Shown here piece by piece: positions 24,831 to 48,907 of a stretch of DNA of 64,000 nt. Under the pieces are notes generated by a model that saw nothing but the letters and a program-made list of their open reading frames with translations, was not told the origin of the DNA and did no database searches. How positions within the stretch are numbered: position 1 is the first letter of the stretch; each line of letters starts with the position of its first letter. The position numbers were made by a program, and so were the translations under genes. The stretch is from contig NC_083224.1 in NCBI RefSeq assembly GCF_032191835.1, forward strand, positions 58,094,001 to 58,158,000. The letters are read 5' to 3'. The DNA comes from Heteronotia binoei (lineage: Eukaryota).

Positions 24831-26014
24831 AATTCTGCTAGAATCTGCTAGAATTGATATTTAGAAGCACTGAAGTTCTGCCTGCAGCTGTACTGCCATT
24901 TCCCCTTTAAGTCAGAACCAAGAAGCTTTTGCTTTGTTTTGGCTTAAAATTAGAAAGCTCTGGGAGTCCCAAGAGCTGTTGTCAGAAGGATCACAGGATC
25001 ATGCAGAACTGACTACATAAAGTGGGGGCATGGTGTATGCCAGCTAAGGGGATATCCTGGTGTGGAAACAGCATCTATCGTTAGTGGTTAAAACTACTCT
25101 TTGATTCATGACACCCAGTCTCTGTATCATTCTGGATATGTACTAAATTCAGAGGGAGCTCTTCTAGTCTGTTTGTTTAAATTGTGTGCTTTGAACCTAT
25201 CAAACAGTTATTTGATAACTTGACCCTGGTTATTTTATTTGTTGACCTGACACTGAAGTGAACTTCAGTCACTTGGGAATTATTCCCATTTATATTCCTT
25301 TCTTGCAGCTCAATGTTCCTGACCAATCAAAGCCACTAAAGTTTTAATCTCAAAAGTTGTTTAGGCTCTCTTAGTTGTTACTCCAGAATCTGGATGAGCT
25401 GCCCAGGTAGGAGTGAGTTGGTAGATGTTAGAGATGTGTGTGGAAATTTTATTCAGATGTGAGTTCAGCTTGTGTTGTTTTTTTCTGTTCAGGTTCTTTA
25501 ATATGTCCCATGTTTGGGTTTATTATTGTATATGCGTGATTCCCACCTCTAAGTTCTGTCTGCACATCAAACTGAAATTAAATTTTCAGAAACTGTAGCA
25601 TCTTCCAAAGGAGTCTTTCATTCTAAAATTTTAAGAAAACTGGAAAGGAATGGAAAAGTGCAACATATTTCTGGAACCAGCTCCTTGCACCAATCCAACA
25701 GGAACAGGATTGTAGCCGTCACTTGAAGGATTATTTATTGTTATTGGCAAGTAGAAGTTTCAATCATATCACATAAAGGTGAAAAATCATTTTGTATATG
25801 TGACTGTAGCGATCTTCCTTTTGCTGAGGTCAGTTAATGTGCAGTATCAAACACCCATGGGAAAAGAATAGTGTGAATTTCCTACTGGTAGGAACGGTGC
25901 AAGCCTGATAATTTGATTAATGCTCTGCAAATCTTCAAACTTCCTCTCTCAGACTGATGAAAAAGAAGTTATTTTCTTTGCAGAATTTGTCCCTGCTTTA
26001 TGGTCTTAACAATA

Positions 26015-26087
26015 ATGGAGCCCTTGTTGAGAGGTCTCCTAGTCCTGTTGTGCTTGCTGACTGTAGAACCAACTGAGTATGTAAATG
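26015..26087 (+). CDS. Novel chitinase-like gene, coding exon 1: signal peptide MEPLLRGLLVLLCLLTVEPTEYVN
   Basis: Strong Kozak ataATGG (alternative in-frame ATG 26000), hydrophobic core, G|GTAAGT phase-1 donor; exon has an upstream acceptor (cag ends 25983). Confidence 0.8.
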
Positions 26088-27983: not shown

Positions 27984-28106
27984 AGAATGCAACACAAGGA
28001 AAAATACCATCGAGATTCTGCAATGTCTATAAACATGTTGCCACAGTTGCTGGAACAGGAGGATCTAAAAATATATCCTTCTGGCATCCAAATTGTCCAT
28101 TTGAAG
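27984..28106 (+). CDS. Novel chitinase-like gene, coding exon 2 (ENATQGKIPSRFCNVYKHVATVAGTGGSKNISFWHPNCPFE), Vps62-like
   Basis: 123 bp, phase 1-1, ctttcttcag acceptor and GTAAAG donor, open frame; Y..V...GTGG...ISFWHP motif. Confidence 0.85.
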
Positions 28107-31100
28107 GTAAAGATAAAAATGTCAGTAGTTTCAATATTACTGCGCCCACATATTTCCTTAGAAAGGTAAAAGCAAGAATCTTTGAGTGTTGGCTTCAAAT
28201 TTTCAGCATGATCATAGCATCTTTGCACTAAAGTGAAAGATGTCTTTACACAGAACTGTGCTCTGTTCTCATTGAACCATCTAGATGTGAAAAGGAAATT
28301 TATTTTCCCGAGATAGACCACATGAAAAAGAGCACATTTCTTTTTAAGTATTCTTAGCTGAATAACAAGGCAGGCTTAATACTGGTTTTGGAGCTTACCT
28401 GTATGTAAGTTTGGGAGGGGGTGAATTGTTCAAAATAATCTTGAGGCATTTGCAGGGACCACTTTGAGGAAAGGGTTAACTACCCCTTTCATGCCCCAGC
28501 AGTCGTCTCCTGCAAGAGCATCCCCCCCCCCCCCCAAATGCTGCATTTTCCTTAATAGGTAAGCATAGGAATGAGAATTTCTTCTAATATGTGACTCAGC
28601 CCTTAATTTACATCCTGTGCTTGGATATGTTTGTTGTTCTGACTGTAGAAAAGGTGCACAGGAGACTGAATTGGCAGCTAATTCTTATAGACAGAAACAT
28701 ATAGAGTTTTCATTCATGATATATGGGAAGCCAGTACGAATGATGAGGAGGGGAGGTGGTATATATACCCCAATCTCATCAGATCTTGGAAGCTAAACAG
28801 GGTTGATATTTGGATGGGAGATGGCCAAAGAAGGCTCTGCAGGAGGACTGTGTGGTGATTCCAGGTGCTGATTCTCTAGGAGAGATTTTCTAATGTCGTT
28901 CATGACAGCATAGAATCCAGCCTGCTTACTGTGCCTTCTTCCCATTCCAAAGTGCTGATGAAACTGACATGGTGGGAAAAAAATCTTGTAGATTTACTTA
29001 CCATTTTGTGGAGGAGGAGCAGTATTATAGTGTACAATGGCTGGTATACATGCACATGCTATTTTTGTGTTTCAAGTACCCACTTTGTGGAACAAGAGCA
29101 ATAGAAAAGCCCTGTGCCATAATGCAAGGGAAGAGGGTGGATTCCATGAATACAGGCTGAAGGAAGGAGGAGAGATGGTGGGGCAGCTGGTGACAGATGA
29201 GCAAGCTAACCTAGTTCTCACCATGGCTCTGCCAAGTGCTGAACACAGCATGTGAGCTCTCCCTGGAGATCGGAATATAGTTGCCTTGTTTTTTCCTACT
29301 GCCATACCATTCCCTCTGCTGCTGGGCCACCTGCTCTCTCCATCTGGGTAGGAACTCAGTACTATTTTTAATATATCCAGTATGATAAACACTCTATCAC
29401 GCTAACACCCAGGGACTAGATAATGTGCAATTGCAACAGAATAGGATGAGCACCAGCAAGATATGACAAACAATTTTATACATTGGTTTTATGAAACCAG
29501 TGAATATAAATAAGTGGCCACCATCAATAATGCAAGCACACTGGAGGTCATGGGGATGGGTTATGGACAGCAGCTACTGTTATTCAGCCTTTTAAAGCAG
29601 CCTGCATATGAGTGTCCCTCCCCTAATACTGATTTTGATTGACTGAGGTCAGGTGCATTTTTGTATCTGTACTATCTACTTTCTTCACGGTGAAGATATT
29701 TTCAAATGATGGCCATGATACTTTGTGCAAATGTAACATGCCTCCAGATCTATCTACTTATCAATCATCAATATATCTGATTCTCAGTGTGCCCCATCTT
29801 TAAAGATTGGAGCCATGACCAGACAAGACAGATCTTTCTATGCACCTGGAGAATTCCCCAAGTTTGCAGAAAAATCTGAAATCTAAAATAAAAATAAAAA
29901 GCACCCCCCAAATAATAAAAGCAGCACCTGTACCTTTAAGAAATGAACGCCCTCTGCAGTGGCCACTGTGGGCATACTAGGCAGCCACAATAATATCACC
30001 AGCCTTAAAACCTTTGTCTTAGTCAGTAAAAGGTAGGGCGAGGGCCCTTTTCAGGGCTGTTGCTGTGATCTTTGAGGGAAGACTAATTGGAGCTGGACCC
30101 AGCAGCAGTCACTTGATACCACATTCATCCAAGGACTGGCTGCTTGCTACTGTTCAGCAGCAGCCACCCCATGAAAGCCAGTGTGGTGTAGTGGTTCAAA
30201 TTTCAGACTAGGATTTTGGAAATCCATGTTTGAATCCCCACTTTGCTATAGAATGCCACTGAGTAACCTTGGGCCAATTATACATTCTCAGCCAAACTTA
30301 GCTTCTGCAGTTGTGAGGATAAAATGGGGAAGAGGAGAATGATGTTAGCTACTTCAGGTGCCCACTGTTGAAAGAGGTAGGGTATAACTGAAATAGAGTA
30401 ATAACAATAAATATAGATGGAAATGGAAGGCAGATAAAAATAGGTGGGTGGAAAAGAAGGATGCCAGGAAATATGAAATATGAAGGAGGAGGGACAGAGG
30501 AAATGGTGTGGGGAAATGGAGACAGGGAAGTGAGGTGCCCTCCACAAGTCCTTGCAGATTTGCCGTGGTGTGGCTAGGCTTTGCCCCACAGCAGGTACCA
30601 TGCAACTAGGCTGGGCCTGGGCCTGTGGTCAGCACCACACAGTTTTCTCAGGGAGAGTGAAGGAGGGAGAGGTGATGACTGAGGGAGATAAAAGGAGATT
30701 GGTTGGTGGATGGGAAGAATAGACAGAAGTAGGAAAAAGGGGAGGCTATGGTGACTCTTAGGAAAGGGAAAATAGTGGAGGAAAGGAAAATAAAATGCCC
30801 CTCAAAATGTTTTTGAGATTAACAGACATGTTTCTATATCCTCCATTTTATCTGCACAACAATCCTGTAATGTAGGTTAGGCTGAGAGCCTGGCCAAAGA
30901 CCATTTTGTGAGCTTAGTGCTAGAGTACGGTTTTAAACCCTGGTTTCCTCAGTCCTAGACCGCCCTGGATCCAGCAATGCACAAACAGAAACATAAATGG
31001 ACTAAGCACAGTTCTGCTTACACATGACCTTGTGCAATATCTAGGGCTTTCCTTCCTATATCTTATGGTGCCCAGAAATTGCTTCCACAGTGTCTTCACA

Positions 31101-31418
31101 CTTTTGCTTACATAAGGATCTTTGTGGTAATCTTCTGGGAGATCCAAGTCCTAGTCTAATATTCTAACCAGTACTCCACACTGGCTGAAGGAGTTAATTG
31201 TTCAATCAATGTAGCTTAGTGTGTCATTAAAATCTTTTAAATATATTTGCATATAGCAGCAGATATGTCTGAATATGAGACACAAGAAGGCAACTGTATT
31301 TTTAAATGAGAAGTGGATATTCTTCACTACTCAAAACTCTGCTTTGTTCTGAACAGTGTCAAGGTGAGAAAATTCTTGAACTTGGTGTAACTAACACCAC
31401 CATGTTGTCTCCTTCCAG

Positions 31419-31530
31419 GCTATTATTCTCTTGGAGATGTGGTTAAAAGAGGTCCTGGACAGCCTATGACTTGGGCTTTGATGGTAAAGGAAGAGAGTAA
31501 TGGTCTTCTGAAACATCCTCAAGGTTTCAG
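31419..31530 (+). CDS. Novel chitinase-like gene, coding exon 3 (GYYSLGDVVKRGPGQPMTWALMVKEESNGLLKHPQGFR), Vps62-like
   Basis: 112 bp, phase 1-2, ctccttccag acceptor and GTACTT donor; GYY.LGDV motif. Confidence 0.88.
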
Positions 31531-31798
31531 GTACTTTATGGAAAATTGTACAGAAAATTTGCTTTTATTTATTGAACTTAATACAATGAATTTGGAATCA
31601 ATCTGTACCCAAAAGTATAGGTTGAAATCCAAAACTGGCAGAATGTTTTGGCTAACAAATGCTGAGAAATACAAGTAGATATTTCCCAAGAGGGTGTACA
31701 GTAGGGTTGCTAGTCCCCAGCGGGTGCCACTCAGAGTGGTGGAGGAAGAAAAATAAAATTGCCATCTGTATGGTGTCACTTCAAGGAACAACCACAAG

Positions 31799-32295
31799 TA
31801 GGCTTCCCAATCCCCAGGTCCCAGCGGGGGATCCCCCGGTTTTACAGGCTTCCCCCCCTCCCCCAGCCAGCTGTCCGGCGGGGGAAGCCCCACCCCCACA
31901 GCCATTATGCACCTCCATGAACAATTCCCATAGGGAATGATGGGGAATTGATCTGCGAGTATCGGGGGCTCTGGGGGGCTGTTTTTTTAGGTAGAGGTGC
32001 CAAATTTTCAGTATAGCATCTAGTGCCTCTTCCCAAAATACCCCCCGAGTTTCAAAAGTATTGGACCAGGGGGTCCAATTCTACGAGCCCCAAAAGAAGG
32101 TGCCCCTATCCTTCATTATTTTCTATGGAAGGAAGGCATTTTAAAAGGTGTGCTGTCCCTTTAAATGTGATGGCCAGAACTCCCTTGGAGTTCAATTCTG
32201 CTTGTCACACCCGTGCTCCTGGCTCCGCCCCCAATGTCTCCTGGCCCCACCCCCAAAGTCCCCAGATATTTCTTGAATTGGACTTGGCAACCCTA
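31799..32295. mobile_element. hAT MITE (TAGGGTTGCCAA family), nested in another related element starting at 31702
   Basis: taggcttcccaa...ttggcaacccta termini; perfect TSD accacaag. Confidence 0.9.
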
Positions 32296-32419
32296 ACCAC
32301 AAGTGACATCAGACCTCTCTAGGAATCACTGAAATCCGGCCAGTTTGTAGAGAGGTGTGACCATTTCCAGGAAAACCTGGATGGCCACCCACATGTCCCT
32401 GCCCCCGCTGCCAGTCTAC

Positions 32420-34520
32420 TGTTGCTTGCCAAGAACTATGACATCTTGTGATTTGGATGTTATGCCTCTGTTTTTACACCCCAAAATTTCATTAGCCTTT
32501 TTTGTCACTTCATCACACTGGCTGCTCATATTTAATTTACAGTCCACTCATACCCCAAGATCTTATTCACATACACTGCTACCTAGAAGTGTATCCCCCA
32601 TCCAGTATGTATGTTCTCCATTTTTGTTATCCAGATGTAGAACTCAGCACTTATCCTTGTTAAATTGCATCTTGTTCACTTCCACACACTTTTCCAGCAT
32701 GTTCACATCTCGCTGAATTCTATCTCTGTCATCTGGTATGTTTGCTGATCCTCCCAATTTGGTGTCATCTGCAAATTTAATGAGTAGCCCCTCCACACCC
32801 TCATGCCGATCATTTATAAAAATATTGAAAAGTACCAGGCCCAGAACTAAACCCTGTGGCACCCCACTGGACACCTCCCTCCATTCAGATGAAATGCCAC
32901 TGACAAGTACTCTTTGAGTGTAGTTCTCCAACCAGTTCCCTGTCCACCTATCCTAGAGTCCAATCTACAGTCCTCTAGCTCAGTTGTCCCCAACCTATCT
33001 GGCCCCAGGGACCGGCCCCCAGGGACCGGCCCACTGACCACAACCCAGAGCAGGCAGGGTGGGGGGGACCCAATTTGGCCTCCCCCCCATGGCGCCTCCT
33101 CCCTCCTGTTTTCCTCCCCCATTTTCCTCCTCCCTCCCTCCCCCTGCACAGCCTCACTGCTTCCTCCTCCCCCCATTTTCCTCCTCTCTCCTCCCCCCCC
33201 CTTGCAGCCTCACCACATCTTGACTCCTTGCACCTTGACTCCTACTTTGTTCTACTGCTTCAGACCAACACAGCTGCCCACCTGGATCTATCCTTCTCCC
33301 CATTTTCTTCCCTTGCCCCGCCCCATGCAGCCTCATCACCTCTCCCCCCCCCCCGTTTTCTCCATTTTAAGGCTGGGGAAGGGGTGGTGAAGTTCTCCCA
33401 GGCTGCCCACCCCCTGCCAAACAGCTGCGGAGGAAAAACTGCCGCAGCCAGTGGCAGCCCAGGGCACGTCGCGCCCCAGGCAGGCACCCCCCAAAGCACA
33501 TCAAACCACCCCCCCTGGGCCCACAGCGCTCACCCCCTCCTTCCCTTCCCTTTCTGTCCTGTTCCATCACCTTCCCCCCCACCCCGCCCCGCTCGCAATC
33601 ACAGCGCGCCACGGCGGAGGGGGGGGAAGCAACAGGACAGGAAGGAAAGGGGATGGGGCGGGTGGCGGTGGTGAGCTTGGAGGAGGAAGCAGACACACCT
33701 TGGCCAGCAGGGCAGGGGGGAGGGAGGCAACAGGAAGGGAAGCGAAAGAGATGACAGAGGAGGAGGCAGGCATGCCACGACTGCAGAGCCCAGGCATAGT
33801 GGGGTGTGAGGCAGAGGAACAGGAAGGGAAAGGAAGGGTGGCTGGTGGCCGGCAGCGAGCGACACTGCCCTTGCCTCCTTCCCATTTGAGGAGGAGGCAA
33901 GGGCAGCATCGCTAGAAGCTGTTTCAGCAGCTTTCCCAGCCAATCAGGTGATTGGTGGGAGGGGAGAGGCTGTGCAGAGGGCGAAGGAGGGAGGAGGAAA
34001 TGGGGGTGTGTGGAGGAGGCCCACGGGGGGGGGGGGGTGTGTGGCGAGGCTGCATGGCCCATGGAAAACAGGCAGTGGCCCACTACCGGTCCCCGGCCCA
34101 GGGGTTGTTGTCCCCTGCTCTAGCTTACCCATCATAACATCATGGGGAACATTGTTAAAAGCTTTACTGAAATTAAACAACATCAACAACATTCTCTTGA
34201 TCCAGTAAGCTCATCACTCAATCAAAAAAGGAAATGAGGTTGGTCTGGCAGGACTTGTTGGGGACAAATCTTTTCTGACACCCCCGGATCACTAAGTTGC
34301 CCTTTAGATGCTTGCAGATTGATCCCCTTAAAATCTGCTGCAGTATCTTTCCTGGGACAGAGGTCAGACTGACTGGCTTGTAGTTTCCTGGGTCATCCCT
34401 CCTCACTTTTTTCAAAATTGGGATAACATCTGCCCTCCTCCAGTCTTATGGCACGTCTCCCCTCCTCCAAGAGGTTTGGAAGATGATGGACAAAGGCTCT
34501 GTAAGCTCTCTAGAAAGATT
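32420..34520 (-). mobile_element. CR1 LINE RT fragment interrupted by a hAT element
   Basis: VSSGVPQG...LFNIFIND...IKFADDTKLGG (32644-32931) and NYKPVSLTSVPGK (34218-34415). Confidence 0.88.
32981..34117. mobile_element. hAT (Charlie-like TIR) non-autonomous element with a GC-rich low-complexity interior
   Basis: Imperfect TIRs cagttgtccccaacc / ggttgttgtcccctg; perfect TSD ctctagct. Confidence 0.85.
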
Positions 34521-35472
34521 TCAGGGTCCATGTTGCTATCCATTGTCTTCCTGTAGTTGTCCATTGTCTTTCTGTCCCACGACTCCTGAACAATGCTCTT
34601 ACACCTTCACTTTTCATTTCCAAATGAGATGAGCAGCAAAAACCCCCCACTACTGTTATTGTTTTCCTTTCTCTACCATTTATCTGAGAAAAGCTGCTTA
34701 AGAATAGGGTTGATCATATCTTATAAAATTAATGAAAAAAGCAAATGAGCAGGTTTCATTCCATTGTCAGTTGTCTAGCTACTATAACAAACAACAACAA
34801 AAACCTGATTGAATGCCATTTGTTTCTATTCATATTGTTTCTCTGGTACCTGGCAGTCATAATGAAAAGAGAGGAATGGGTAACAGAAGGAAAGGGAGTT
34901 GGGAGAGTTGACTTTGCATCTGTGGCAGAATGTGCCTGTTCTGGCCTGCAGACCCTATTCCGCCCTGCCCTCCTAGGTGTTTCTCCACACCTGGAGAGGC
35001 TTTTCTTCTACTCTCAGGGTACCTCATCACCACCACCTGACCTTTTTATGAAATTGCCCATTGGGAGGGTCAGGGGTCCCAGCTTCTCTTCCAAGTTCTG
35101 AGGCCTTGCCTCTGTGTCTCCCACAGTGCCTAGTCACCACTGGGACAGTTTACTGTCTTGTGTGGCCTGGGAGGAATAGCCATTTGCCAACTACCTGCCT
35201 TCTCCCCGGCACTTCTTTTAAAATAGTGCATCTGAGACAGTGGACATCTGTGTGGTACAGAGAGAACCACTGACAGCCTCAAAAGTTATAAGGCACTTTT
35301 TAAAAGAAAATATTTACAAGCATACTTTTAGCACAGCACCAGATTGAGCAAGGGCTACAAAACAAATGGGTAAAACACAAATCTTCTATTCCTCTCTCTA
35401 TACATGCCCTATCAGATGTTAAAATATAGGACAGGCCTCTTTAGCTTTGATAGTTATAAATTTCTATAAAAC

Positions 35473-36270
35473 TAGGGTCCAAGTCCAATTACGGAAATAT
35501 CTGGGGACTTTGGGGGTGGAGCGAGGAGACACCGGGGTGGAGCTAGGAGCAAGGGTGTGACAAGCACAATTGAACACCAAAGGGAGCTCTGTCCATCACA
35601 ATTAAAGGGACCTCACAACTTTTTAAATGCCTTCCATCCCTCCACCCTCCCCTTCTCTGATTTCACCTTAGAGGCGGAGCGGAGCGGGTGACGTCGCTGC
35701 GCTGCTGCCGCCTCTTCTCAGCTTCACCGTAGCTGCTCCTCCGAGATGGGCTCAGCCTGAGCCCATCTCGGAGGAGCAGCTACAGTGAAGAGGAGAAAAG
35801 GCGGCAGCGCAGCGACGTCACCCGCTCCGCTCCGCCTCTGAGGTGAAATCAGAGAAGGGGAGGGTGGAGGCAGGCCAGGAGTGTGGCAATCCGCGAGTCC
35901 GGGTCCTAGAAGGACCCAAATTCACGGCTCGCCATGCTCCTGGCCTGCCTCCACCCTCCCCTTCTCTGATTTTACCTCAGAGGCGCAGCAGAGCGGGCGA
36001 TGCCGCTGCGCTGCTGCCGCCTCTTCTCCGCTTCATCTTAGCTGCTCCTCCGAGATGGGCTCAGCCTGAGCCCATCTCGGAGGAGCAGCTACGGTGAAGC
36101 GGAGAAGAGGCGGCAGCTGCGCAGCGGTGTCGCCCGCTCCGAGATGGGGTGGCTCGCCACGCTCCTTGGCGCTGTTTCCCCCCTCCCCCCACTTCTGTTT
36201 TTTGGGGGAGCGGGGGAAGAGGCTGGAAATCCTGGGGTCCCCCGCCAGGGTGGGAGGGTTGGGAAGCCTA
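35473..36270. mobile_element. hAT MITE (TAGGGTTGCCAA family) with long internal palindromes
   Basis: Family termini; TSD tataaaac/tacaaaac. Confidence 0.9.
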
Positions 36271-36971
36271 TACAAAACTTTCATTACCTTGAAGGTTTCT
36301 CCAGCTGTTTAGGTCAGCACATGGTCAAGAATGGCTGCCTTCCTCGAGGAGAGATCTGCTCTGCATCCTCTCATGGAAAAGGAACCTCCTTCATGTTGCA
36401 AAGAGTTTTTAAAAATCATATCTGTTTCGTCACCCACTGATCAGGTCATGCCAGGTCAAAGAGGCTTTACCTGGACATCTCTAGAATTCTTCCTGAAGAC
36501 TTTGTAGCCTTAATCTCTCCAAGTCTTTGTTCCCTGCTTGGAGAAGGGGCAGAGATTGACCCACCCATTATCTCTCCTGCTACATCTTCGCATTTATATG
36601 CAGGTGAGCTGCCTGGAAAACAGTTGAACTGACTTCCCTCCACTGCCTGTTCTCTGCCCTGGATGGGAGACACACTGTTAAAATACAAAATGTAGGTTTT
36701 GCTTATCTCAAACTTCCCAGAGGAAAATGCATTTCTTCATAACAAGTGAAGAATATTATCCTGAAATGCCATTTTCTCTTGCACTTCCTTTAAAAAAAGA
36801 CAGTGTAATGTTGTTGATACAGCTGATTTTGAACTCTGCAGTGTCAGAATATCTGGTTTGTTCTACCTGCAGGGCAGATAGATAATTCCTCCAAAATGTG
36901 AAAAAGTCTTCAGATGTGAGAGTTGTTCACCACTATTTCTAATAACACATTTCAATGTTTTGGTTTTTTAG

Positions 36972-37109
36972 GGAACTCTGGAAAAAGAGAAACCATGGAG
37001 CAAAGACTGAAATTAAAATACTTGAAATGGAGTGTTCAAATGGATATAAAGCTCTAGGTAATGTAGTTATTAAGGGCTACAATCCGCATCCTGATTGGCA
37101 TCGTTACAG
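36972..37109 (+). CDS. Novel chitinase-like gene, coding exon 4 (ELWKKRNHGAKTEIKILEMECSNGYKALGNVVIKGYNPHPDWHRYR), Vps62-like
   Basis: 138 bp, phase 2-2, ttttttag acceptor and GTAAGT donor; GY.ALG.VV..GY.P motif. Confidence 0.88.
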
Positions 37110-37560
37110 GTAAGTTGAGAGCTCTATTTTCTTCTCTTGGTTTAATTTAGATCTTTTTACAGAACTGTAAAAATGATAATAGTACATTGTTAAATTTTTA
37201 TTTTGACTATAATAGGTCTGAAGAGGAAATAAAATATAAAACAGGTCTGAATAGATAAGAATTGCATCTAAGCTCTACTAATGGCTAGGTGTCTACACTG
37301 TGCCAGCTTAGTAGGATTTTAAGATCCAATATCAGAAGGAGTCACAGTGTAATCCCGCATGAAACATGTGTTGGGAAACATGTGTGAGGGTTTAGAGAAG
37401 GTACAGTAAATAGTAGGTGTCCAAAAACTGCATGAGAAAAGATCACTGAGTGAAGACAATGGAGATTAATGAAGAAGGCTTTGAGAGAGGATGATGACTG
37501 AGAACAATTTATTATATCTATTTATTATATAATTGCTGTTTAAAATCTGATGGCTGTAAT

Positions 37561-37752
37561 CATTGTTCCCGCTAAGCTGTGGAGTCCTGTGAGCAAAAAT
37601 TCTACTTTGTGAGCTACTGGCATTGAAGTTGTGAGCTACTGTATAAATTGGTTTGCTCTGGGGCTGTTTTTCCTGAGCTAAGACAAAAATATGTGAGCCA
37701 GAGGCAAAAAAACTGAGCTAGCTCACATTAACTCAGCTTAGAGGGAACACTG
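37561..37752. mobile_element. hAT MITE (CAGTGTTCCC-type TIR)
   Basis: TIRs cattgttcccgctaagctg / cagcttagagggaacactg; perfect TSD gctgtaat. Confidence 0.9.
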
Positions 37753-38143
37753 GCTGTAATCGTGTTGTGAGCTGCCTCTCCAAAAACTTCAGTTGTGCCT
37801 CTTTGACATGGCTCCTGTGGCTCTTCTGGCCACTGTTCCCAAATGTTGTGCCCACCCAATATTCTAGGAATGTGTGCAATAATTTCAACAAAACCACTCA
37901 AATAAAATTATATGATTCTACTTACCCCTGACCAGAAACCCATGATTTTAAATTTGCCTTTTGTTTTTGACTTGTTGCAGTTGATAAACATGGGACAAAA
38001 CTGATCTTTGGAGCTTAATGTGTGATACCCAAATCAATAACTTAATTAAACATAAATCAATAGATGTCACAATAGATTAAGTGGAAAAGAGCTTCAAATG
38101 CATGGATAGAATTAATATTCTTCTAAAATTACAATTTCTATAG

Positions 38144-38250
38144 GTGTGTCAATGAAAGTCTGTTAGTACACGGAAAATCTGAATTTATCTTAAGTCTGAC
38201 CGATGAGTTTGGAGCATGGGAAATTGAAGCAGATCATGCTGTATCTACAG
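38144..38250 (+). CDS. Novel chitinase-like gene, coding exon 5 (CVNESLLVHGKSEFILSLTDEFGAWEIEADHAVST), Vps62-like
   Basis: 107 bp, phase 2-1, tttctatag acceptor and GTAATC donor; completes the YRCV motif across the junction. Confidence 0.85.
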
Positions 38251-39589
38251 GTAATCCTACTTAGTATAGCTGCTACAATAACATAACAGCAAGAGATATC
38301 CGGGTGGGTGGCCATGTTGGTCTGAAGCAGTAGAACAAAGTCTGAGTTTTGTGGCATGGCAGATTTAAATGTACTCTGATCTGGTCTGAAAATAACTCTA
38401 TACAGCCAATTGCCCCACTTCAATTAAAAAGATGTTGCAAGGTCATCTCCATGCTTGACAGGAGAAGGATGGAACCTAAGTCAGACTCTCACCACAATTA
38501 AGGATACTTCAGTCTCCAATTCTGACATATTTATAACCTTTGGTATGTTCCTCCCCATAGTTGAATCCAAACAGATGATAACCATATATACTAAACTAAT
38601 TATTATTTCAGTCTGTTAAGACACCTTCATTATTTTGTATGCTGATTGACAGTCCACCCGCCATATGTATGACTGTTATTTCTATTTTCATTCTATTGTA
38701 TCCGAAGAAGTGTGCTTGCAGACAAAAGCTCATAACCTGAATAAAACTTAGTTGGTCTTAAAGGTGCCGCTGAACTCAAACTTTGTTTTAAAGAGCAAAA
38801 GGATTGTACTAAGGAAGAATAAATGGATAATCTATATTTTTTAGAATGAATCTTCCATAAAACTTGTAAGACCGGATATGTAACATTTGGCAACTAGAGA
38901 TACCTTTTAACATGTATCTGTGTTGTGATCACAGCCCGCAAATTTTACAGGCAGACTTTGTGAGCTTAATATTGCCTATGGACGGACAATTTTCTTTGCT
39001 AGAGGAGCTTCAGTGCTTATGTCCTTTTTTATTAATTACATGCTGCCTCTCTAGAGACCTGCTCAAAGCAGCTTGCATAGTAAAACAGTAGACAATAAAA
39101 TCACATTATACTGTATTATATTATATTAATAAAAGAAGCCATAAAGGAAGCCAGGGGTATAAAACAGCATGAAAATATTCATCAGTCTAAAGTATTATTC
39201 ATAAAACAATCTATGGGCTAGATAAGATTGACCATTTCAGTTAAAAGCTTGGGTAAAGATAAATGTTTTATCCTGGCACCTAAGGAACAGTAAAGTAGAT
39301 GCAAAAAAACAAAAACAAAAAACAACCCTTGTGGAGGAAGGCTTATGTGTAAAGTGGTGTCAAATTTCTGCTGATTTACATTGATCCTATAGGATTTTCA
39401 AGGCAAAAGACACTGTATTTACTAACAGAAGTTTCCGACCCACCAAAGTATGTTACAGAAATATAAACCCAATGTGATCAGAGCATAGATAATAATGTTC
39501 ACAGAATGCTTTTTTGAGGAGTGGCTGTAATTGGTATGTAAGACAAAGCTGGTAAAAAGCACTGTGTGTCATGGAGGAAACCCCCACAT

Positions 39590-41010
39590 AGTTCCAGACC
39601 CAGCAGCACCCCTGAGCTACAAACATGATCCTTCAGCAACAGCATCTGTTCCAGGATAAGCTGATTTATGAACCATTGAGCTGGTGTAAGCAGCCAATAG
39701 TTCCTCAGTCTTGTCTGGACTAAGCTTCTGTTTACTTTCCATTATCCAACCTATTACCTTGTCTTGGCATTTGTTTAGGACTTCCACAGCCCCACTCATC
39801 TCAGGTGTTAAGGAAGAAACAGAACTGGGCATCATCCTCATATTGTGGCATGTCACTTCAAAATAGACTTGTCAATCCCCAGGTCCGGGGGGGGGGGAGT
39901 TCTTCCACTTTCCCAGGCTACTTCCCGCCCCCAGTCAGCTGGCTGGCGGGGGAAGCCCCTCCCCCAGAGGACCATGTGCCTTTCCACCTCCGGAGGCTTC
40001 AGTCTCCGATTGAAAGGCTTCCTCTTGGGATGGTGTGTCTGTGTTACTTTGAAGAAGCTGGCAGCAACTCGTGAGTAGAAAGGCCAATCCCTTGCTTCAG
40101 AGTCGCCAGAAACGGGGTGGTGGTGGGGGGGAGGGAAACGTCTGCTGAGCACTTCATTATTCCCTATGTGGAGATCAATTCTCATAGGGTATAATGGGGA
40201 ATTGATCTGGAGGTTTCAGGGGCTCTGGGGGAGCTGTTTTTTGAGGCAGAGGCACAAAATTTTCCATATAGTATCTAGTGCCTCTCCCCAAATACCCCCC
40301 AAGTTTCAAAACAATTGGACCAGGGGGTCCAATTCTATGAGCCCCAAAAGAAGGTGCCCCTATCCTTCATTATTTCTTATGGAAGGAAGACATTTAAAAA
40401 GGTGTGCTGTCCCTTTAAATGTGATGGCCAGAACTCCCTTGGAGTTCAATTATGCTTGTCACACCCTTGTTCCTGGCTCCGCCCCCAATATCTCCTGGCT
40501 CCATCCCCAAAGTCTCCTGGCTCCACCCCCAAAGTCTCCTGGCTCCACCCCCAGAGTCTCCAGATATTTCTTGAATTGGACTTGGCAACCCTACTTCAAA
40601 ACCCCAAACAATCTCTGCAAATAGTTTAATGAAGATATTAAATAGCATGGGGAACAATAGGGTCCCTTGTGGGACCCTATACCACAAATGCAATGGAATC
40701 AAGCTACAGTCCTCCATCGCTTTCTGGAATAAGCAAGTCAAATTGGAATGGAACCATCATGCCCGCACCCCCCCCCCATCAATGCAGCTAGCCTCTCCAT
40801 AAGTATTGTAGGTGCCTGTTTTTTGGCCACTGTGTGACACAGAGTATTGGATTGGATAGGTCATTGGCCTGATCCAACATGGCTTTTCTCATGTTCTTAA
40901 GTATACTGTGGTCAATGGTACTGCAAGTCACCAAGAGATCCAGAAGATTGAAGAAGGATGCATTCTCCCAGTAAAGATAATCAACCAGTGTGACCAAACC
41001 CAGACTTGAG
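39590..41010 (-). mobile_element. Decayed L2-clade LINE region interrupted by a hAT MITE and a CR1 3' tail
   Basis: Degenerate LLDL...TIDH, VPQG..LFPMLFNIFIK and KLSPDKTE motifs; boundaries approximate. Confidence 0.65.
39864..40593. mobile_element. hAT MITE (TAGGGTTGCCAA family)
   Basis: Family termini (reverse orientation); perfect TSD cttcaaaa. Confidence 0.9.
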
Positions 41011-42983
41011 CCTGGACTAAAATGGGACTAGATAATCCATGCCCTCCAAGAGCACTTGAAGCTGCATAGCTATCACTTACTCAAGCACTTTGTCCAAGAA
41101 TGGCATGTTGGCCACTGGACTAGTTATATAGGCCATTTGGGTCCAGCGATCAGGGGCAAGTTGGGGGGCCCCACCCAGCCTACCTTGGCTCCATCTCCAA
41201 TCCTATCCTCAGCACATTACATTCTTGCAACCCAAAGGAGGGAGGGAGAGCATTCTGGCCAGCCCCAAGCAGAAGCCTGGAAGAAAGGATGGATATAATG
41301 CATCCTCTTTCTCCCTTTGCTTGGTTTTCTATTCCCCACTACCATATTTCCCATTGATACCTCTGATTAACCTTGCAGTTATAAAACAGAAATCTACAAA
41401 GTCATTTTAAATACTAATATTGAAAGAGCACAGACTTGGTAAGGGGAAAAAACCACAGAGTAAAAAATACTAGAAGTAATCAAAACATTAAATATTGATA
41501 AACCTCCAGGAAGGAAGGAATTCTCAGCAGAATTCTGTAAGCAGTCCAGCAACAAAATACTGACTTCCCCTAACTGATCTCTTTCATGCTGTCCTAAAGA
41601 AGGGCAGAATCTTCGAGATATAGTGAGAGACAAAAGTAGTATATGTATCCCATGAATTGCATCCCATGGTATCCTACTTCCTGCTGAAACAGGACAGAAA
41701 GTTATTCACATCTCTGATTGTTGGCAGAATTTTTAAATCAAGGAATACATAATAAACCATTAAATGTTATGCTATTGAACCAAATGTCAGACAACATCAG
41801 ACATCCTTAAATATTATAAACTATAGCAAAATTAAGTCCATCACATCCCTACTGACTGGCAGCATTAAGCTTTTAATCAAGGAAGGAATACATTTTGCCA
41901 AACCTTTATGTGAAAAAAGTCATACAACCTTGGTTTTCTATAGTTTATTTTTTAATGCAACAAGAAGTCCTACCAGCTAATGCTCTGTATCAATCTCTGA
42001 TTTATTTTTAGGTAATTAGTTTATCAGTAATATTTTATGTTAATTGTTTTTTAGTTTAATAGACTAATCAAATAGTTAATTGTGTCATATCTTAATAAGT
42101 ATAAGAGCTTTGTTATATCTTTAGTTGACCTATGCTTTAATGTAGCCATATTATGTATGAAACAGTATTACGTGTAAGAACTGTGGTAGTTTATTCTGTT
42201 AAAAAGTTAATAAAAATTGTAAATGGGGAAAAAATGAAGGAATACATAATAAACATTAATGTTTTATGCTATCAAACCAAATGTCAGACAACATCAGACA
42301 TGCTTTAAACATTATCCATTTTAACAAAATGAAGTCCATCCCCTTCACAAAAATTTAACTTACTGCTGAGAGAGCTTCACAGAATGATTCATACCAAAGA
42401 TAGAAACATACAAACTTTGGACTATATTCTTCCAGAAAATATTTTAGAGCAACCCAAAAGCCATATGTGGAAGTTAATGACTTCCAATTGATAGACTTCC
42501 TGGTTTGGCGAGAACTCAACAGGGATAACTGTTGTCTCCCTTCTTCCTTGTCATGTCTCTAGAGTCCCCAGCTGAAGCAATTAGATGCAACCCTAATCAC
42601 CATAAGATTAGCTTTTCCCCAATGATATAATACTTTATGCCACCTTCCCAGAAACCTCAGTTTTCTATATTCAAGAGAAATTGGACAAATATACCAGAGT
42701 GTTGGCTTTTAAAATAAGCCTCCTGACCTGCAGAGCTATTAGCTCACATGGGTCTCATCACCTTAGGAATAAACTTTCTCAGGGTTCGAAAGGGTTGCTG
42801 AGGAGAAGAATGTGAGAAAGATCCATGATCCTTGTGTCCATGATCACAGGATCTAACCTAGTGTATGAGGCCCCTTTTAAATCTATTTGGTTGAAGTATA
42901 TCGATATAGCATGCTATCAATAAGGAAAAAGTGCTGTTATGTTAACCTTTGTATCTGGATTATTTTAGATGGCTTATCTGCAG

Positions 42984-43100
42984 GAACTTTTATAATTATG
43001 ACCAATCACCCTGAACACATGGAAAGAGTCTACGTCCTCAATGAATACAAAGTTATGTTAAAACAACATGCATCTCTTCAGTCAAATGATTCTGAGGATG
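42984..43100 (+). CDS. Novel chitinase-like gene, coding exon 6 (GTFIIMTNHPEHMERVYVLNEYKVMLKQHASLQSNDSED), end of Vps62-like domain plus linker
   Basis: 117 bp, phase 1-1, GTAAGT donor; GTF motif. Alternative in-frame acceptor at 42969. Confidence 0.82.
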
Positions 43101-44349: not shown

Positions 44350-44554
44350 GGTCTCCTTGCAAGATTGTATGTTACATCACTAAGTGGGCTCAATTCCGGC
44401 GTGATCCTACAAAGTTTTACCCAGAGGATATAGACCCAGATTTGTGCACTCATATAACATTTGCCTTTGCGATCATAAGCAAAAACCAACTCTCCCTTAA
44501 TGGATGGGATGAAGGAAGTGTCCTTTTCTCCCAGATTCAAACATTAAAGAAGAG
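44350..44554 (+). CDS. Novel chitinase-like gene, coding exon 7: first GH18 exon (SPCKIVCYITKWAQFRRDPTKFYPEDIDPDLCTHITFAFA...)
   Basis: Clear GH18 motifs VCY..WAQ.R and IDP.LCTH..AFA; 205 bp, phase 1-2. Confidence 0.95.
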
Positions 44555-45568
44555 GTCAAGTTTTGTTTGTTGGTTTTTAAAATGCTTAGATACAATATGA
44601 GATATAAATGTGAGCTGAGAGGGAAAGGCTGCTTACACTTTGTATAATATTTAAGCATTCTATGGGGAGTCTGAAGACTCAGATTCTATTCTAGCATAAA
44701 TTGATCTAAACACTAAGAGGATCCAAGGAAGAATTTGCCAGGTAATGATTTATAAACAGGATAAGAAAGTTGTAAGAAAGAAAATATTGTTTTGGCCTTA
44801 CTGATATACTGTTAGCCATCCATGGGTGAGAACTGCGGATATCTAAAACTAAGGATTGGGTCCATTTGGAGGCTAAAGAGATTTTTCTGCACACTTGAGA
44901 GACTCCCCAGCTGTGCAGAAAAATCTGAAAATAAAAAAGCTGTGAAGAGGTGGCAGCTGTGAAGCCCAGGGCTCATGCTGGACCCAGCAGCCGTGATAGT
45001 GGCTACTCAGTTGGGCCTCCATACTGGGCTCAGCAGTGGCAGTAGCATCTGCACAGCCCAAGGCTCTCCATTGGGTCCAGCGATGGCAGTGGCTATGCAT
45101 CCTGGGGCTCTGTGCTAGACCCAGCAGTGCCCCATGCAGCCTGGCAGCCACATTGGGCATACTGCTGCACTGTGGCTGGGCTCCCAAGGAGTCATGCCAG
45201 ACAGTGATTGGGGGAGTGAGATTCTGCCCTGCAAGTTTTGTGGGGGGCCTACATGATTTAGCAAACACAGCATGTCCAGTGGTTCACCAGAACATCTCTA
45301 ACACCTGTCACTGAAGGGGGCAAGGGATTCCCTTTACTAGAGGGAGTCAAGAAGCAGCAGCAGAGATACTAGGGCTGTTAATGCCACTCTATATAGGCAC
45401 CCAGCTCCTGAATGAATAGTGAAATCTGGTGCTGGCAAATGATGCCATCAGTTTCACCCATGACAGTTAGTACTAGCTAATGATGAGCAGCTGTGTGTCT
45501 ACGCAATGCTTCAGTGGCAGCCCTGATGTCTCTGTGGCTTCCTCTAGATATTCTCTACTGACAGCAAC

Positions 45569-45733
45569 CAGGGCTTTTTTTCTGGAAAAAGAGGTTCCGG
45601 AACTCTCAAGAGGGAAACGGAGAAACACATGGGCGCCCCTCATGAACTTTTAAATATTTTTTTATAATTGTGTTTCCAAAAGAGGTTCCAGAACTCTGCC
45701 ACTGCATTTCCCCAGGGGGAAAAAAAGCCCCTG
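45569..45733. mobile_element. hAT MITE (CAGGGCTTTTTT family)
   Basis: TIRs plus perfect TSD acagcaac. Confidence 0.88.
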
Positions 45734-46021
45734 ACAGCAACAAATTCTCTTCAGGGACTTTCAGGGGCAGTTTTCCAGGCAAACTGCTACAATAGCCTTC
45801 CAAAGCAGCCATTTTCTTCAGATGAATTGGTAAGCATCCAATAGCAGCCAAAACATCTAGTAATGAGAAATACAAATATCCTGAATCTGAGTTTACATGT
45901 TTGGTTTGCTGAAGTGCATGTGTGTGTGTGTAATAACAATGGTTATAGATTTCCTACAAAAAAAAAACCTGCTCCCAGTTTTTTACTTAAATATATCAAA
46001 TATATTTCATTTTTTTCACAG

Positions 46022-46075
46022 AAATCCAGCATTGTTTATTTTGTTAGCTGTTGGAGGAAACAGATTTGGCACTGC
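46022..46075 (+). CDS. Novel chitinase-like gene, coding exon 8 (NPALFILLAVGGNRFGTA)
   Basis: Equivalent of the GH18 K.LLAIGGWNFGT exon; 54 bp, phase 2-2, GTGAGT donor. Confidence 0.92.
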
Positions 46076-46597
46076 GTGAGTTTTCTCATTCACTTTTGAA
46101 AGGTGAAAGGACAGGGATAGTGATGGCAGACATGATAAGGAGCTAATGACTGGGGAGGGGTATGTGAACTAAGCTACTACTGTCACCAGACTTCCACTTG
46201 TGAACCTCCTTCTGCTTGAGGCAAGGGAAGGTGGGAGGAAATCTACTTCTGTGATCTCTTGCAATTGATCCAATTTTCTCAATAGGCTCTGGTTCTGTAT
46301 AAGCAGCAGCAAATCCTATTTGGTTGGTCATCTCTTCTTTGATACTGTACTTGCTAGCACCAGAGGTTTGATTTGCTTGTGTCTCCTGGAGAGCAGGCAT
46401 TTGAGTGTGTGGGGGGTGGAGAGGCATATACTATATACTCTCCTCAATGACAGAACACAGTAGACAGAAATGTTTTCCTGAATTTGACAGGACACAGGCT
46501 GTACAGATGGGGAGGAGGGGTGTTGGAGAGGCTAATGAGACATGAAAAAATATCAGTGGTATGGAAGGATATGAACTCTCTACCTGAGATAGATCGA

Positions 46598-46706
46598 TGG
46601 GTAGCTGTGTTACTCTGTCTGTAGTAGTAGAAAAGAGTTCAGTAGCACCTTAAAGACTAACAAAGAGTATGAGCTTTCATGAGTCACTGCTCACTTCTTC
46701 AGATCC
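46598..46706 (-). mobile_element. Penelope-like terminal-repeat fragment containing a minimal type I hammerhead motif
   Basis: Minus: GGAT CTGAAGA A GTGAG cagtga CTCAT GAA AGCT C ATAC; related copies at about 23080, 38700, 44080 and 47845. Confidence 0.7.
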
Positions 46707-48294: not shown

Positions 48295-48460
48295 TTTCAG
48301 CCCCATGCTTTCCACAACAGCCACCCGCAAGAGCTTCATTGACTCAGCTGTATCCATGCTACGGAGTTATGGCTTTGATGGAATCGAACTGCACTTTAAA
48401 TATCCTGGGAGTGGGAGAAGTCCCGCTAAGGACAAGCATCGCTTTGCTTCACTGACTGAG
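48295..48460 (+). CDS. Novel chitinase-like gene, coding exon 9, carrying the degenerate catalytic motif FDGIELHFKYPG
   Basis: 166 bp, phase 2-0; LRSYGFDGIELHFKYPGSGRSPAKDKHRF aligns to [29 protein letters not shown] of AMCase. Confidence 0.95.
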
Positions 48461-48538
48461 GTATGAAATCAATAGGTTTAGCCAATTATTTGGTTCTACT
48501 AAGCAGGGAAGAAGCTGAAAAGACCTTTGCTTTCCTAG

Positions 48539-48663
48539 GAAATGACAGCAGCTTTTGAAAAAGAGGCCAGAGAGACTGGAAATAAGAAGCTGTTACTTGC
48601 TGCAGCAGTTGCTGCTCGGAAAGAAACAATTGATGCTGCATATGAAGTTGGCAAACTGTCAAA
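48539..48663 (+). CDS. Novel chitinase-like gene, coding exon 10 (EMTAAFEKEARETGNKKLLLAAAVAARKETIDAAYEVGKLSK)
   Basis: 125 bp, phase 0-2, canonical splice sites, GH18 similarity. Confidence 0.95.
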
Positions 48664-48783
48664 GTGAGCTGAAAGAAAACTATGATTTTTCTGAGAGCAT
48701 TTTTTGGGGAAATAAAGTCTGATATAACAATGAAAAAAATCTTTCTATAATTGCTTTCTAACTCTAAATTATTTTTGTTGCAG

Positions 48784-48907
48784 ACATCTTGATTACATTA
48801 ATGTAATGGCCTACAATTTCCATGATGGTTTTTCTGACACAGTGACAGGGCACAACAGTCCCTTGTTTGCAGGTGATCACTCTGAGGAAAGCCTGCATTC
48901 CAGCTGT
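48784..48907 (+). CDS. Novel chitinase-like gene, coding exon 11 (HLDYINVMAYNFHDGFSDTVTGHNSPLF...)
   Basis: 124 bp, phase 2-0; LDY..VM.Y and TGHNSPL GH18 motifs. Confidence 0.95.

What the first reader, a model, noticed from the sequence alone, without database searches (positions are those of the whole stretch)
27984..43100. Hidden five-exon Vps62/DUF946-like repeat module spread over 15 kb
Spliced peptide: ...YKHVATVAGTGGSKNISFWHPNCPFE-GYYSLGDVVKRGPGQP...ALMVKEESNGLLKHPQGF-RELWKKRNHGAKTEIKILEMECSNGYKALGNVVIKGYNPHPDWHRY-RCVNESLLVHG...GAWEIEADHAVST-GTFII... It shows an internal repeat (GYYSLGDVV..G..P / GYKALGNVV..GY.P) and the order W..GSG-like, SFW.P, GY.LG.V, YRCV, GTF. From memory this matches the Vps62-related repeats of plant/protist VPS13 and some secreted invertebrate and fish proteins. 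A secreted, lizard-encoded member tied to a chitinase is unexpected. The fold (possibly a three-fold beta-prism) and ligand are inference.
Basis: partly seen in the sequence, partly recalled or inferred. Interest (0 to 1): 0.85.

Follow-up and report, generated by a model that had tools for sequence, protein, structure and literature searches.

The report
Beta-tripod domain on gecko chitinase-like gene
The five small exons are real and encode a diverged "beta-tripod" (Pfam Vps62/DUF946) domain, known elsewhere as the targeting part of pore-forming toxins; in geckos it forms the N-terminus of a secreted, catalytically dead chitinase-like protein with a mucin stalk and two chitin-binding domains, a domain combination I found described nowhere.

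Summary
Five + strand exons (27984-28106, 31419-31530, 36972-37109, 38144-38250, 42969-43100) have AG/GT sites and the predicted intron phases 1,1,2,2,1,1. Only the last acceptor needs correcting: 42969, not 42984, as an RNA contig shows.

- Pfam's Vps62 model misses the protein.
- A profile-profile comparison links it to Vps62-positive proteins (E 1.6e-30).
- An AlphaFold model (pLDDT 88) superposes on the beta-tripod domain of the insecticidal protein GNIP1Aa (Z 19.5) and on Arabidopsis DUF946.
- The three-fold internal repeat is real.
- The family's signature motif D-x-G-S/T-G-x3-D is lost in all three subdomains.

The module is not a stand-alone gene. It sits between a signal-peptide exon (26000) and eight GH18 exons (44350-52782), followed by a last exon (54057-54787) with a Thr-rich repeat and two CBM14 domains. 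Together these give an intact 15-exon, 847-aa ORF. The catalytic motif reads DGIELHFK, so the enzyme is dead.

Eublepharis has the same 15 exons. Snakes keep the tripod and the CBM14 domains but have no GH18 block. dN/dS is 0.5 between the two geckos, which means moderate constraint.

The function, probably a chitin-anchored recognition protein, is inferred.

The parts
26000..26087 (+). Exon 1: start codon and signal peptide (MVLTIMEPLLRGLLVLLCLLTVEPTEYVN), with a phase-1 donor
   Evidence: tblastn and exact mapping of P0001. The signal peptide was judged by eye from its hydrophobic core; no predictor was run.
27984..28106 (+). Exon A: beta-tripod subdomain 1, first half (…VAGTGGSKNISFWHPNCPFE). 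It holds a remnant of the DxG[ST]GxxxD motif.
31419..31530 (+). Exon B: subdomain 1, second half (GYYSLGDVVKRGPGQP…HPQGF)
36972..37109 (+). Exon C: subdomain 2 (RELWKK…GYKALGNVVIKGYNPHPDWHRY)
38144..38250 (+). Exon D: end of subdomain 2 and start of subdomain 3 (RCVNESLLVHG…AWEIEADHAVST)
   Evidence: It is present in RNA contig X1 record 2.
42969..43100 (+). Exon E: rest of subdomain 3 (DGLSAGTFII…SNDSED), with a phase-1 donor.
   Evidence: An RNA joint links 38250 to 42969; exact mapping.
44350..52782 (+). Eight GH18 exons: 44350-44554, 46022-46075, 48295-48460, 48539-48663, 48784-48907, 49003-49185, 50450-50569, 52647-52782. The catalytic motif reads FDGIELHFKYP (canonical DGxDxDxE), at 48295-48460.
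   Evidence: tblastn with Eublepharis P0028; splice sites and the open frame; Pfam GH18 hits on five single exons, in profile order.
54057..54787 (+). Last exon, with a phase-1 acceptor: VCSDAGH…, a Thr/Pro-rich stalk, two CBM14 domains (about 54452-54589 and 54614-54748), and the stop codon at 54785-54787
   Evidence: Pfam CBM_14 at E 6.8e-19 in two stretches. It is the orthologue of the snake last exon that begins VCADLG…. RNA run X1 holds 0.32 of the words of 54057-56070.
54110..54432 (+). An 18-bp tandem repeat of about 18 copies, encoding TTLQTS/TTLRPS hexapeptides (a mucin-like stalk)
   Evidence: Tandem Repeats Finder
47105..47118 (+). Four-codon terminal exon (VLYN, then stop) that the NCBI model P0001 uses in place of the GH18 exons. 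It is either an alternative 3' end or a model artefact.
   Evidence: Pattern search for the model's C-terminus

Best explanation
Exons A-E encode a diverged beta-tripod domain (Pfam Vps62/DUF946, about 200 aa, three pseudo-symmetric beta-rich subdomains). This domain forms the N-terminal part of a single secreted 847-aa protein with this layout: signal peptide, beta-tripod, catalytically dead GH18 chitinase-like domain, Thr/Pro-rich mucin-like stalk, two CBM14 chitin-binding domains.

Shown here: the exons, their splicing at the D-E junction, the fold, the homology, an intact 15-exon frame in two geckos, and a shorter tripod-CBM14 version in snakes.

Inferred origin: the module is flanked by phase-1 introns, and it was most likely shuffled into the intron behind the signal-peptide exon of an AMCase/CHIT1-type chitinase paralogue in an early squamate. 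The donor was probably the first beta-tripod domain of a vertebrate beta-tripod-aerolysin gene.

Inferred function: the protein does not cut chitin. The CBM14 pair anchors it to chitin (prey cuticle, fungal or parasite surfaces, or a chitin-containing mucosal layer). The stalk holds out two recognition heads, the beta-tripod and the dead GH18 cleft, so the protein acts as a chitin-associated lectin or barrier protein in a restricted tissue. I put about 0.4 on this functional part.
For: Exons and phases.

RNA:
- Contig X1 record 2 (2,836 nt) carries exon D joined to exon E. It has 586 nt before exon D and 2,009 nt beyond exon E.
- A 2,544-nt CDS plus about 125 nt of 5'UTR and about 167 nt of 3'UTR fits that length.
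- X1 also holds 0.32 of the words of 54057-56070.

Fold and homology:
- hhalign E 1.6e-30 to Vps62-positive proteins.
- PDB profile hit to 6fbm.
- AF2 model with pLDDT 87.9 and pTM 0.83.
- 6fbm_A residues 314-520 at Z 19.5, with 187 residues aligned.
- Foldseek E 3.8e-10.
- At1g04090 at TM 0.70.
- The five best structural neighbours in the ESM Atlas (TM by query 0.65-0.74) are all Vps62 clusters.

One gene:
- Eublepharis protein P0028 joins exon E to GH18.
- The window has collinear GH18 exons, all GT-AG, giving an 847-aa open frame.
- The phase-1 junction ED|V-CSDAG matches the snake junction N|V-CADLG.
- Eublepharis has an intact 799-aa frame over the same 15 exons.

Dead enzyme: the window reads DGIELHFK and Eublepharis DGIDLHFE, against DGLDFDWE in AMCase.

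Constraint, gecko against gecko: omega is 0.50 for the tripod (p 0.003) and 0.34 for GH18 (p 1.5e-9).

Synteny: a Shisa5-like gene lies downstream in four snakes, and its first exon lies at about 57.7 kb in the window.

Origin: in the tree the squamate tripod is sister to the axolotl D1 domain, with support 83/86.
Against: - Pfam PF06101 does not recognise the protein.
- The signature motif is absent from all three subdomains.
- NCBI's Heteronotia model stops after exon E, in a 4-codon exon at 47105.
In this species the joints E to GH18 and GH18 to the last exon therefore rest on homology, on phases and on contig length.
- Three RNA-seq runs of the same species label show no reads on exons D and E. 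The tissue of the one positive run is unknown.
- Omega is high among snakes (0.5-0.9, and above 1 for Thamnophis) and is 0.76 for the CBM14 domains between geckos.
- No binding or expression data exist, so the function is entirely inferred.
Confidence: 0.8

Rival explanations
1. The five exons, together with the signal exon, make a stand-alone 237-aa secreted beta-tripod protein, as NCBI annotates it (LOC132567301). On this view the GH18/CBM14 exons downstream are a separate chitinase-like gene, or are joined to the tripod only in a minor isoform.
For: P0001 is an NCBI model that ends in a terminal exon at 47105. My E-to-GH18 junction in this species has no direct read support.
Against: - No signal-peptide exon for a separate GH18 gene was seen between 43100 and 44350.
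- GH18 exon 1 has a phase-1 acceptor that fits exon E.
- The Eublepharis model joins the two parts.
- The RNA contig runs 2,009 nt beyond exon E, which fits the full coding sequence.
- Snakes splice exon E straight to the CBM14 exon.
- The 47105 exon lies between GH18 exons and codes only four residues.
Confidence: 0.12
2. The module is a decaying relic: exons captured once and now drifting, without a function of their own.
For: - Omega is high (0.5-0.9, and above 1 for Thamnophis).
- The signature motif is lost.
- In Eublepharis exon C has a GC donor and is skipped in the NCBI model.
- Expression was not detected in three runs.
Against: - The frames are intact and the splice junctions identical in two geckos and four snakes, which span the deepest split among squamates (established knowledge).
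- pN is significantly below pS in gecko-gecko and gecko-snake comparisons.
- Cys, Gly, Trp and Pro positions are invariant.
- The fold is predicted with confidence.
- The exons are transcribed and spliced.
Confidence: 0.04
3. The module is the targeting domain of a pore-forming toxin gene, as in its nearest relatives (beta-tripod x2 + aerolysin/ETX-MTX2).
For: The closest Pfam-positive homologues carry an aerolysin-type C-terminal domain. Beta-tripods of known function sit on MACPF toxins.
Against: - No aerolysin or MACPF exon follows in the window. GH18 and CBM14 follow instead.
- Searching the own genome with the axolotl protein finds no second beta-tripod. The only aerolysin-like frame is on another contig.
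Confidence: 0.02

Closest known systems
Beta-tripod domain of GNIP1Aa (PDB 6fbm; Zaitseva et al. 2019) and Pfam Vps62/DUF946 (PF06101, IPR009291)
   Same: The fold is the same: three pseudo-symmetric subdomains, Z 19.5, 187 residues aligned. The W..(S/F)W.P / GY.LG / YRCV / GTF sequence pattern is shared. Homology is detectable at the profile level.
   Different: - The D-x-G-S/T-G-x3-D signature is missing in all three subdomains.
- The protein scores below Pfam's threshold.
- The domain is attached to a dead glycosidase and to chitin-binding domains, not to a MACPF pore former.
- The host is a vertebrate.
Beta-tripod x2 + aerolysin/ETX-MTX2 proteins of about 585 aa (axolotl XP_069489682.1 and unnamed marine or metagenomic members)
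   Same: These are the nearest sequence relatives, at 25-35% identity and hhalign E 1.6e-30. The squamate module groups with their first domain, next to the axolotl protein.
   Different: They have two tripods with intact motifs and a pore-forming C-terminal domain. The squamate gene has one motif-less tripod and no pore-forming part.
Acidic mammalian chitinase / chitotriosidase (GH18 + hinge + CBM14)
   Same: The GH18 block is closest to AMCase and CHIT1 (E about 1e-123 for the Eublepharis orthologue). A final exon that encodes hinge plus CBM14 is also shared (for AMCase, from my own knowledge).
   Different: - There is an extra N-terminal beta-tripod.
- The catalytic motif is destroyed: DGIELHFK.
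- Trp of GGW is changed to Asn (GGNRFG), and YD to YN.
- There are two CBM14 domains and a long Thr-rich repeat.
- The gene lies 22 Mb from the genome's GH18 cluster.
Chitinase-like lectins with mucin tails (OVGP1/oviductin; YKL-40, Ym1) and VCBPs of amphioxus and Ciona (recognition domain + CBM14)
   Same: It may work like these: a non-catalytic GH18 or another recognition head on a secreted, glycosylated or chitin-bound scaffold. This comparison rests on my own knowledge and is an analogy only.
   Different: None of them carries a beta-tripod. Membership was not tested, and the tissue and ligands here are unknown.

Membership tests
Beta-tripod / Pfam Vps62 (PF06101) | Pfam HMM hit above the gathering score | tested here: not met
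   There was no hit at E<=10 on single exons and none at E<=0.1 on the 237-aa protein P0001 or the snake protein P0017. The six-frame genome search with PF06101 is uninformative, because its controls did not ring either.
Beta-tripod / Pfam Vps62 (PF06101) | Significant profile-level homology to proteins that do pass PF06101 | tested here: met
   hhalign gives 99.85%, E 1.6e-30 over 195 columns, against proteins with PF06101 at E 1e-20 to 1e-26. phmmer with exon C alone gives E 2e-11 to P0003.
Beta-tripod / Pfam Vps62 (PF06101) | Fold: three pseudo-symmetric beta-rich subdomains, as in the C-terminal domain of GNIP1Aa | tested here: met
   The AF2 model has pLDDT 87.9. Foldseek to 6fbm_A gives E 3.8e-10 and TM 0.71. 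VIA gives Z 19.5 on residues 314-520. The sub-unit profiles match each other at 97-99%. All of this rests on a predicted structure, not a solved one.
Beta-tripod / Pfam Vps62 (PF06101) | Signature D-x-G-S/T-G-x3-D in the subdomains (as quoted in PMC8624791 from Zaitseva 2019) | tested here: not met
   The signature occurs 0 times in both geckos and in four snakes, against 3-6 of 6 in the six aerolysin-type (~585-aa) relatives; the two sea-cucumber proteins have one each. The only remnant is VAGTGGSKN in Heteronotia subdomain 1.
GH18 chitinase (active enzyme) | GH18 domain present | tested here: met
   Pfam GH18 hits five window exons in profile order. The Eublepharis orthologue scores E 6.7e-91.
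GH18 chitinase (active enzyme) | Catalytic motif DxxDxDxE with the acid Glu | tested here: not met
   The window reads DGIELHFK, so the Glu is Lys and the third Asp is His. Eublepharis reads DGIDLHFE, so the third Asp is His. No enzyme assay was done.
CBM14 (peritrophin-A) chitin-binding domain | Pfam hit and the six-Cys pattern | tested here: met
   PF01607 at E 6.8e-19 in two stretches on 54059-54784. A third copy lies after the stop and is broken by stop codons. Binding was not assayed.
Aerolysin/ETX-MTX2 pore-forming toxins | A pore-forming domain in the same gene | tested here: not met
   None is present in the window's gene. The only aerolysin-like frame in the genome is on contig C15.

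The most novel reading that the evidence does not exclude
Early squamates took the receptor-targeting beta-tripod of a vertebrate aerolysin-family pore-forming protein. By phase-1 exon shuffling they placed it in front of a chitinase paralogue that then lost catalysis. The result was a new kind of chitin-anchored recognition protein. It has been kept since the gecko-snake split, one of the deepest among squamates. Snakes later deleted the symmetric (1-1) GH18 block, leaving a tripod-CBM14 mini-protein. On this reading, the motif-less tripod binds a ligand different from that of toxin tripods.
Probability: 0.35. Interest if true: 0.75.

Novelty: new variant of a known kind. Interest (0 to 1): 0.62.

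Why it matters
Beta-tripod domains of known role are the targeting parts of pore-forming toxins such as GNIP1Aa and pleurotolysin B. Their roles in plant VPS13M and in thousands of DUF946 proteins are unknown.

A vertebrate copy that has been cut loose from any pore former and welded to chitin-binding parts offers two things:
- a natural experiment on what the fold recognises;
- a clean, datable case of exon shuffling, since the module is a phase 1-1 set, followed by modular loss of the GH18 block in snakes.

It also adds an unrecognised member to the vertebrate chitinase-like lectins, a group studied for immunity and for insect diets. Current annotation hides it: 'uncharacterized protein' in Heteronotia and the snakes, 'acidic mammalian chitinase-like' in Eublepharis, and no Pfam call on the tripod. 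I found no paper that links Vps62, DUF946 or beta-tripod to a vertebrate chitinase.

Tried and rejected
- Pfam on each single exon found nothing.
- The PF06101 six-frame search of the own genome found nothing, but the controls were silent too, so it is uninformative.
- A regular-expression search for the canonical GH18 motif missed the GH18 exons, because the motif is mutated. They turned up only through the Eublepharis hit.
- Word-indexed protein searches with P0001 and with P0017 found only close relatives.
- Exon C also hit clam and other Sushi-repeat proteins (P0002, P0004, P0013). I read these as motif-level noise (C..GY.L.G), because they have no Vps62 call.
- My first choice of donor for the last GH18 exon (a GC at 52776) was wrong. 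The conserved G|GTGAG at 52782 is used in both geckos.
- The look-up of encoding contigs gave no record for P0001 and no DNA for the 140-kb axolotl gene. Intron positions of the putative donor family therefore could not be compared.
- The key paper, Zaitseva 2019 (PMC6386698), is not held. What I say about it comes from papers that cite it.
- RNA runs X4-X6 gave reads only on intronic repeats.
- dS between gecko and snake is near saturation (0.73-0.94), so those omega values are rough.


Full report
**Observation.** The spliced product is a continuous open frame of about 195 aa with no second copy in the window. Exon C is single-copy in the 2.6-Gb genome.

Searching exon C alone against 1.8 billion representative proteins returned a 100% match, P0001 (237 aa), which NCBI names 'uncharacterized protein LOC132567301 [Heteronotia binoei]'. 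Mapping P0001 exactly onto the window gives:
- signal-peptide exon 26000-26087
- exon A 27984-28106
- exon B 31419-31530
- exon C 36972-37109
- exon D 38144-38250
- exon E 42969-43100

One detail differs. This is shown directly: a 2,836-nt contig of RNA run X1 (depth about 40) carries exon D joined to 42969 over a GT..AG intron. Three other RNA-seq runs with the same species label have no reads on exons D and E, so expression is restricted.

**What the module is.** Pfam sees nothing in the single exons or in P0001. The further hits of exon C, however, are proteins of about 585 aa with two strong PF06101 (Vps62) matches (E 1e-20 to 1e-26) and an aerolysin/ETX-MTX2 C-terminal domain. One of them is from the axolotl.

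The evidence for the fold and the homology is:
- A profile of the gecko and snake modules aligns to the first Vps62 domain of that family with hhalign probability 99.85% and E 1.6e-30 over 195 columns.
- The same profile hits one solved structure by sequence, GNIP1Aa (6fbm), at E 1.6e-6.
- An AlphaFold2 model built on a 19-row alignment is confident (pLDDT 87.9, pTM 0.83).
- Its best PDB match is the C-terminal domain of GNIP1Aa (Foldseek E 3.8e-10, TM 0.71; VIA Z 19.5, 187 residues, chain residues 314-520). Next comes the C-terminal domain of pleurotolysin B, at Z about 13.
- In Swiss-Prot models the only match is the Arabidopsis DUF946 protein At1g04090, at TM 0.70.
- The five best structural neighbours in the ESM Atlas (TM by query 0.65-0.74) are all Vps62 clusters. 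One is a 590-aa Vps62 + aerolysin cluster that is commonest in chordates.

The literature calls this Vps62 domain the 'beta-tripod'. It was first seen in GNIP1Aa, where it serves target recognition, and it also occurs in plant VPS13M (PMC7613979, PMC10683392, PMC8624791).

One defining feature fails. The signature D-x-G-S/T-G-x3-D is present in 3-6 of 6 subdomains of the aerolysin-type relatives but absent from all squamate proteins, apart from a remnant in Heteronotia (VAGTGGSKN). This probably explains the Pfam miss. So this is a beta-tripod by fold and by descent, but a diverged one.

**What gene it belongs to.** The snake homologues come from Vipera, Pseudonaja, Candoia, Thamnophis, Pantherophis and Ophiophagus, and all are 'uncharacterized' or auto-named 'chitinase'. 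They carry a signal peptide, the module, a short linker and two CBM14 domains. Their seven exons have the same junctions as the gecko's.

A profile search then found a leopard-gecko protein, 'acidic mammalian chitinase-like' (P0028). Its first 182 residues are the module without exon C, and the rest is a full GH18 domain (Pfam E 6.7e-91). With P0028 as a guide, the window proved to hold eight GH18 exons between 44350 and 52782. Five of them hit Pfam GH18 on their own, in profile order.

After these comes a last exon at 54057-54787. It has an 18-bp tandem repeat of about 18 copies that encodes a Thr/Pro-rich stalk, then two CBM14 domains (E 6.8e-19).

All 14 introns are GT-AG, and the 15 exons give an uninterrupted 847-aa frame. 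The junctions fit in three ways:
- Exon E ends in phase 1.
- Both the first GH18 exon and the last exon start in phase 1.
- The gecko junction …ED|V-CSDAGH mirrors the snake junction …N|V-CADLG.

The Eublepharis genome has the same 15 exons and a 799-aa frame. That includes an intact exon C, whose donor is GC and which the NCBI model skips, and the CBM14 exon, which the model omits.

The RNA contig has 586 nt before exon D and 2,009 nt after the end of exon E. That fits about 125 nt of 5'UTR, a 2,544-nt CDS and about 167 nt of 3'UTR. The same run holds 0.32 of the words of 54057-56070. This is circumstantial. I could not lay reads on the GH18 region, and NCBI's Heteronotia model instead ends in a four-codon exon at 47105.

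**State of the domains.** The GH18 block is closest to AMCase and chitotriosidase, but its catalytic motif is DGIELHFK in Heteronotia and DGIDLHFE in Eublepharis, against DGLDFDWE in AMCase. Further cleft residues are changed as well (GGW to GGN, YD to YN). By established GH18 knowledge this means little or no hydrolysis, so it is a chitinase-like lectin. The two CBM14 copies are intact, and a third copy behind the stop codon is broken.

**Evolution.** Between the two geckos, omega by domain is:
- tripod 0.50 (pN below pS, p 0.003)
- GH18 0.34 (p 1.5e-9)
- stalk 0.35
- CBM14 0.76 (not significant)

Among snakes the module's omega is 0.5-0.9, and above 1 against Thamnophis. Between gecko and snake it is about 0.6, with dS near saturation. 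The gene is therefore constrained but fast-evolving, as many secreted recognition proteins are.

Other evolutionary findings:
- Snake loci have no GH18 remnant between exon E and the last exon.
- Because the GH18 block is a phase 1-1 set, its loss keeps the frame.
- A Shisa5-like gene follows in all four snake loci, and its first exon is recognisable at about 57.7 kb of the window, so the loci are orthologous.
- In a small tree the squamate modules are sister to the first tripod of the axolotl aerolysin-type protein (support 83/86), apart from all the second tripods (100/99).
- The gecko genome has no other detectable tripod, and its other GH18 genes form a cluster 22 Mb away.

My reading is inference. 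A tripod module flanked by phase-1 introns was shuffled behind the signal exon of a chitinase paralogue before geckos and snakes split, and snakes later lost the GH18 block.

**Mechanism.** What is shown is a secreted multi-domain architecture with two chitin-binding modules, a mucin-like stalk, a dead GH18 cleft and a toxin-type recognition fold. What is inferred is that the protein binds chitin through CBM14 and presents the tripod and the dead GH18 as recognition heads, either on chitinous material in the gut or another mucosa or as an OVGP1-like secretory glycoprotein. No ligand, tissue or phenotype is known.

**Novelty.** All the parts are known. The combination, the vertebrate host and the motif-less tripod are not described in the papers I could search. 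Another first-stage note on this window (s1-337996) reads the same chimera, and my tests agree with it.

**Verdict.** This is a new variant of a known kind, of moderate to high interest.

Noticed in passing
window 11514-15353 (-): There are three long adjacent reading frames (509, 479 and 282 aa), and the second looks like a reverse transcriptase. This is probably a young, nearly intact LINE retrotransposon upstream of the gene.
   Followed up: no
window 57580-58060 (+): A GC-rich stretch holds a start codon and a signal-like peptide (MGTWALAGMALCSLAAVATL). It is similar to the first exon of the Shisa5-like gene that lies downstream of the snake orthologues, so synteny is conserved.
   Followed up: partly
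L006:15742-15879 (Eublepharis macularius): Exon C is intact in the leopard-gecko genome but has a GC donor (AG|GCAAGT). It is skipped in NCBI's protein model, which also omits the CBM14 exon at 39426 onwards. The annotated 579-aa protein therefore lacks one tripod subdomain and the chitin-binding tail.
   Followed up: partly
window 47105-47118 (+): NCBI's Heteronotia model ends in a four-codon exon (VLYN, then stop) that lies between GH18 exons. It is either an alternative 3' end that yields a tripod-only protein or a model artefact.
   Followed up: partly
window 54788-54870 (+): A third CBM14-like copy sits directly behind the stop codon and is interrupted by stop codons (…STYPYPGDPTKY*ICSGGQIHLH*). 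It is a decayed repeat of the chitin-binding tail.
   Followed up: partly
window 37500-37900 and 40100-40900: Intronic repeats draw very deep RNA coverage at 95-99% identity, with many mismatches and loose ends, in all four runs. These are reads from other genomic copies of an expressed repeat family, not from this gene.
   Followed up: no
L007:1006-2019 (G000:C15:43202800-43203813): A single 337-aa open frame has its C-terminal half matching the aerolysin-type domain of the axolotl protein (E 8e-5). It may be a natterin/aerolysin-like gene of the gecko.
   Followed up: no
G000:C2:80.20-80.56 Mb: There is a large cluster of GH18 exon matches on both strands, amounting to several chitinase genes. 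It lies on the same chromosome, 22 Mb from the chimeric gene.
   Followed up: no
P0021 / L005:10001-10357 (Thamnophis elegans): The garter-snake gene model carries an N-terminal reverse-transcriptase piece (Pfam RVT_1) fused to the orthologue, which is probably an annotation artefact. This lineage also shows omega above 1.
   Followed up: no
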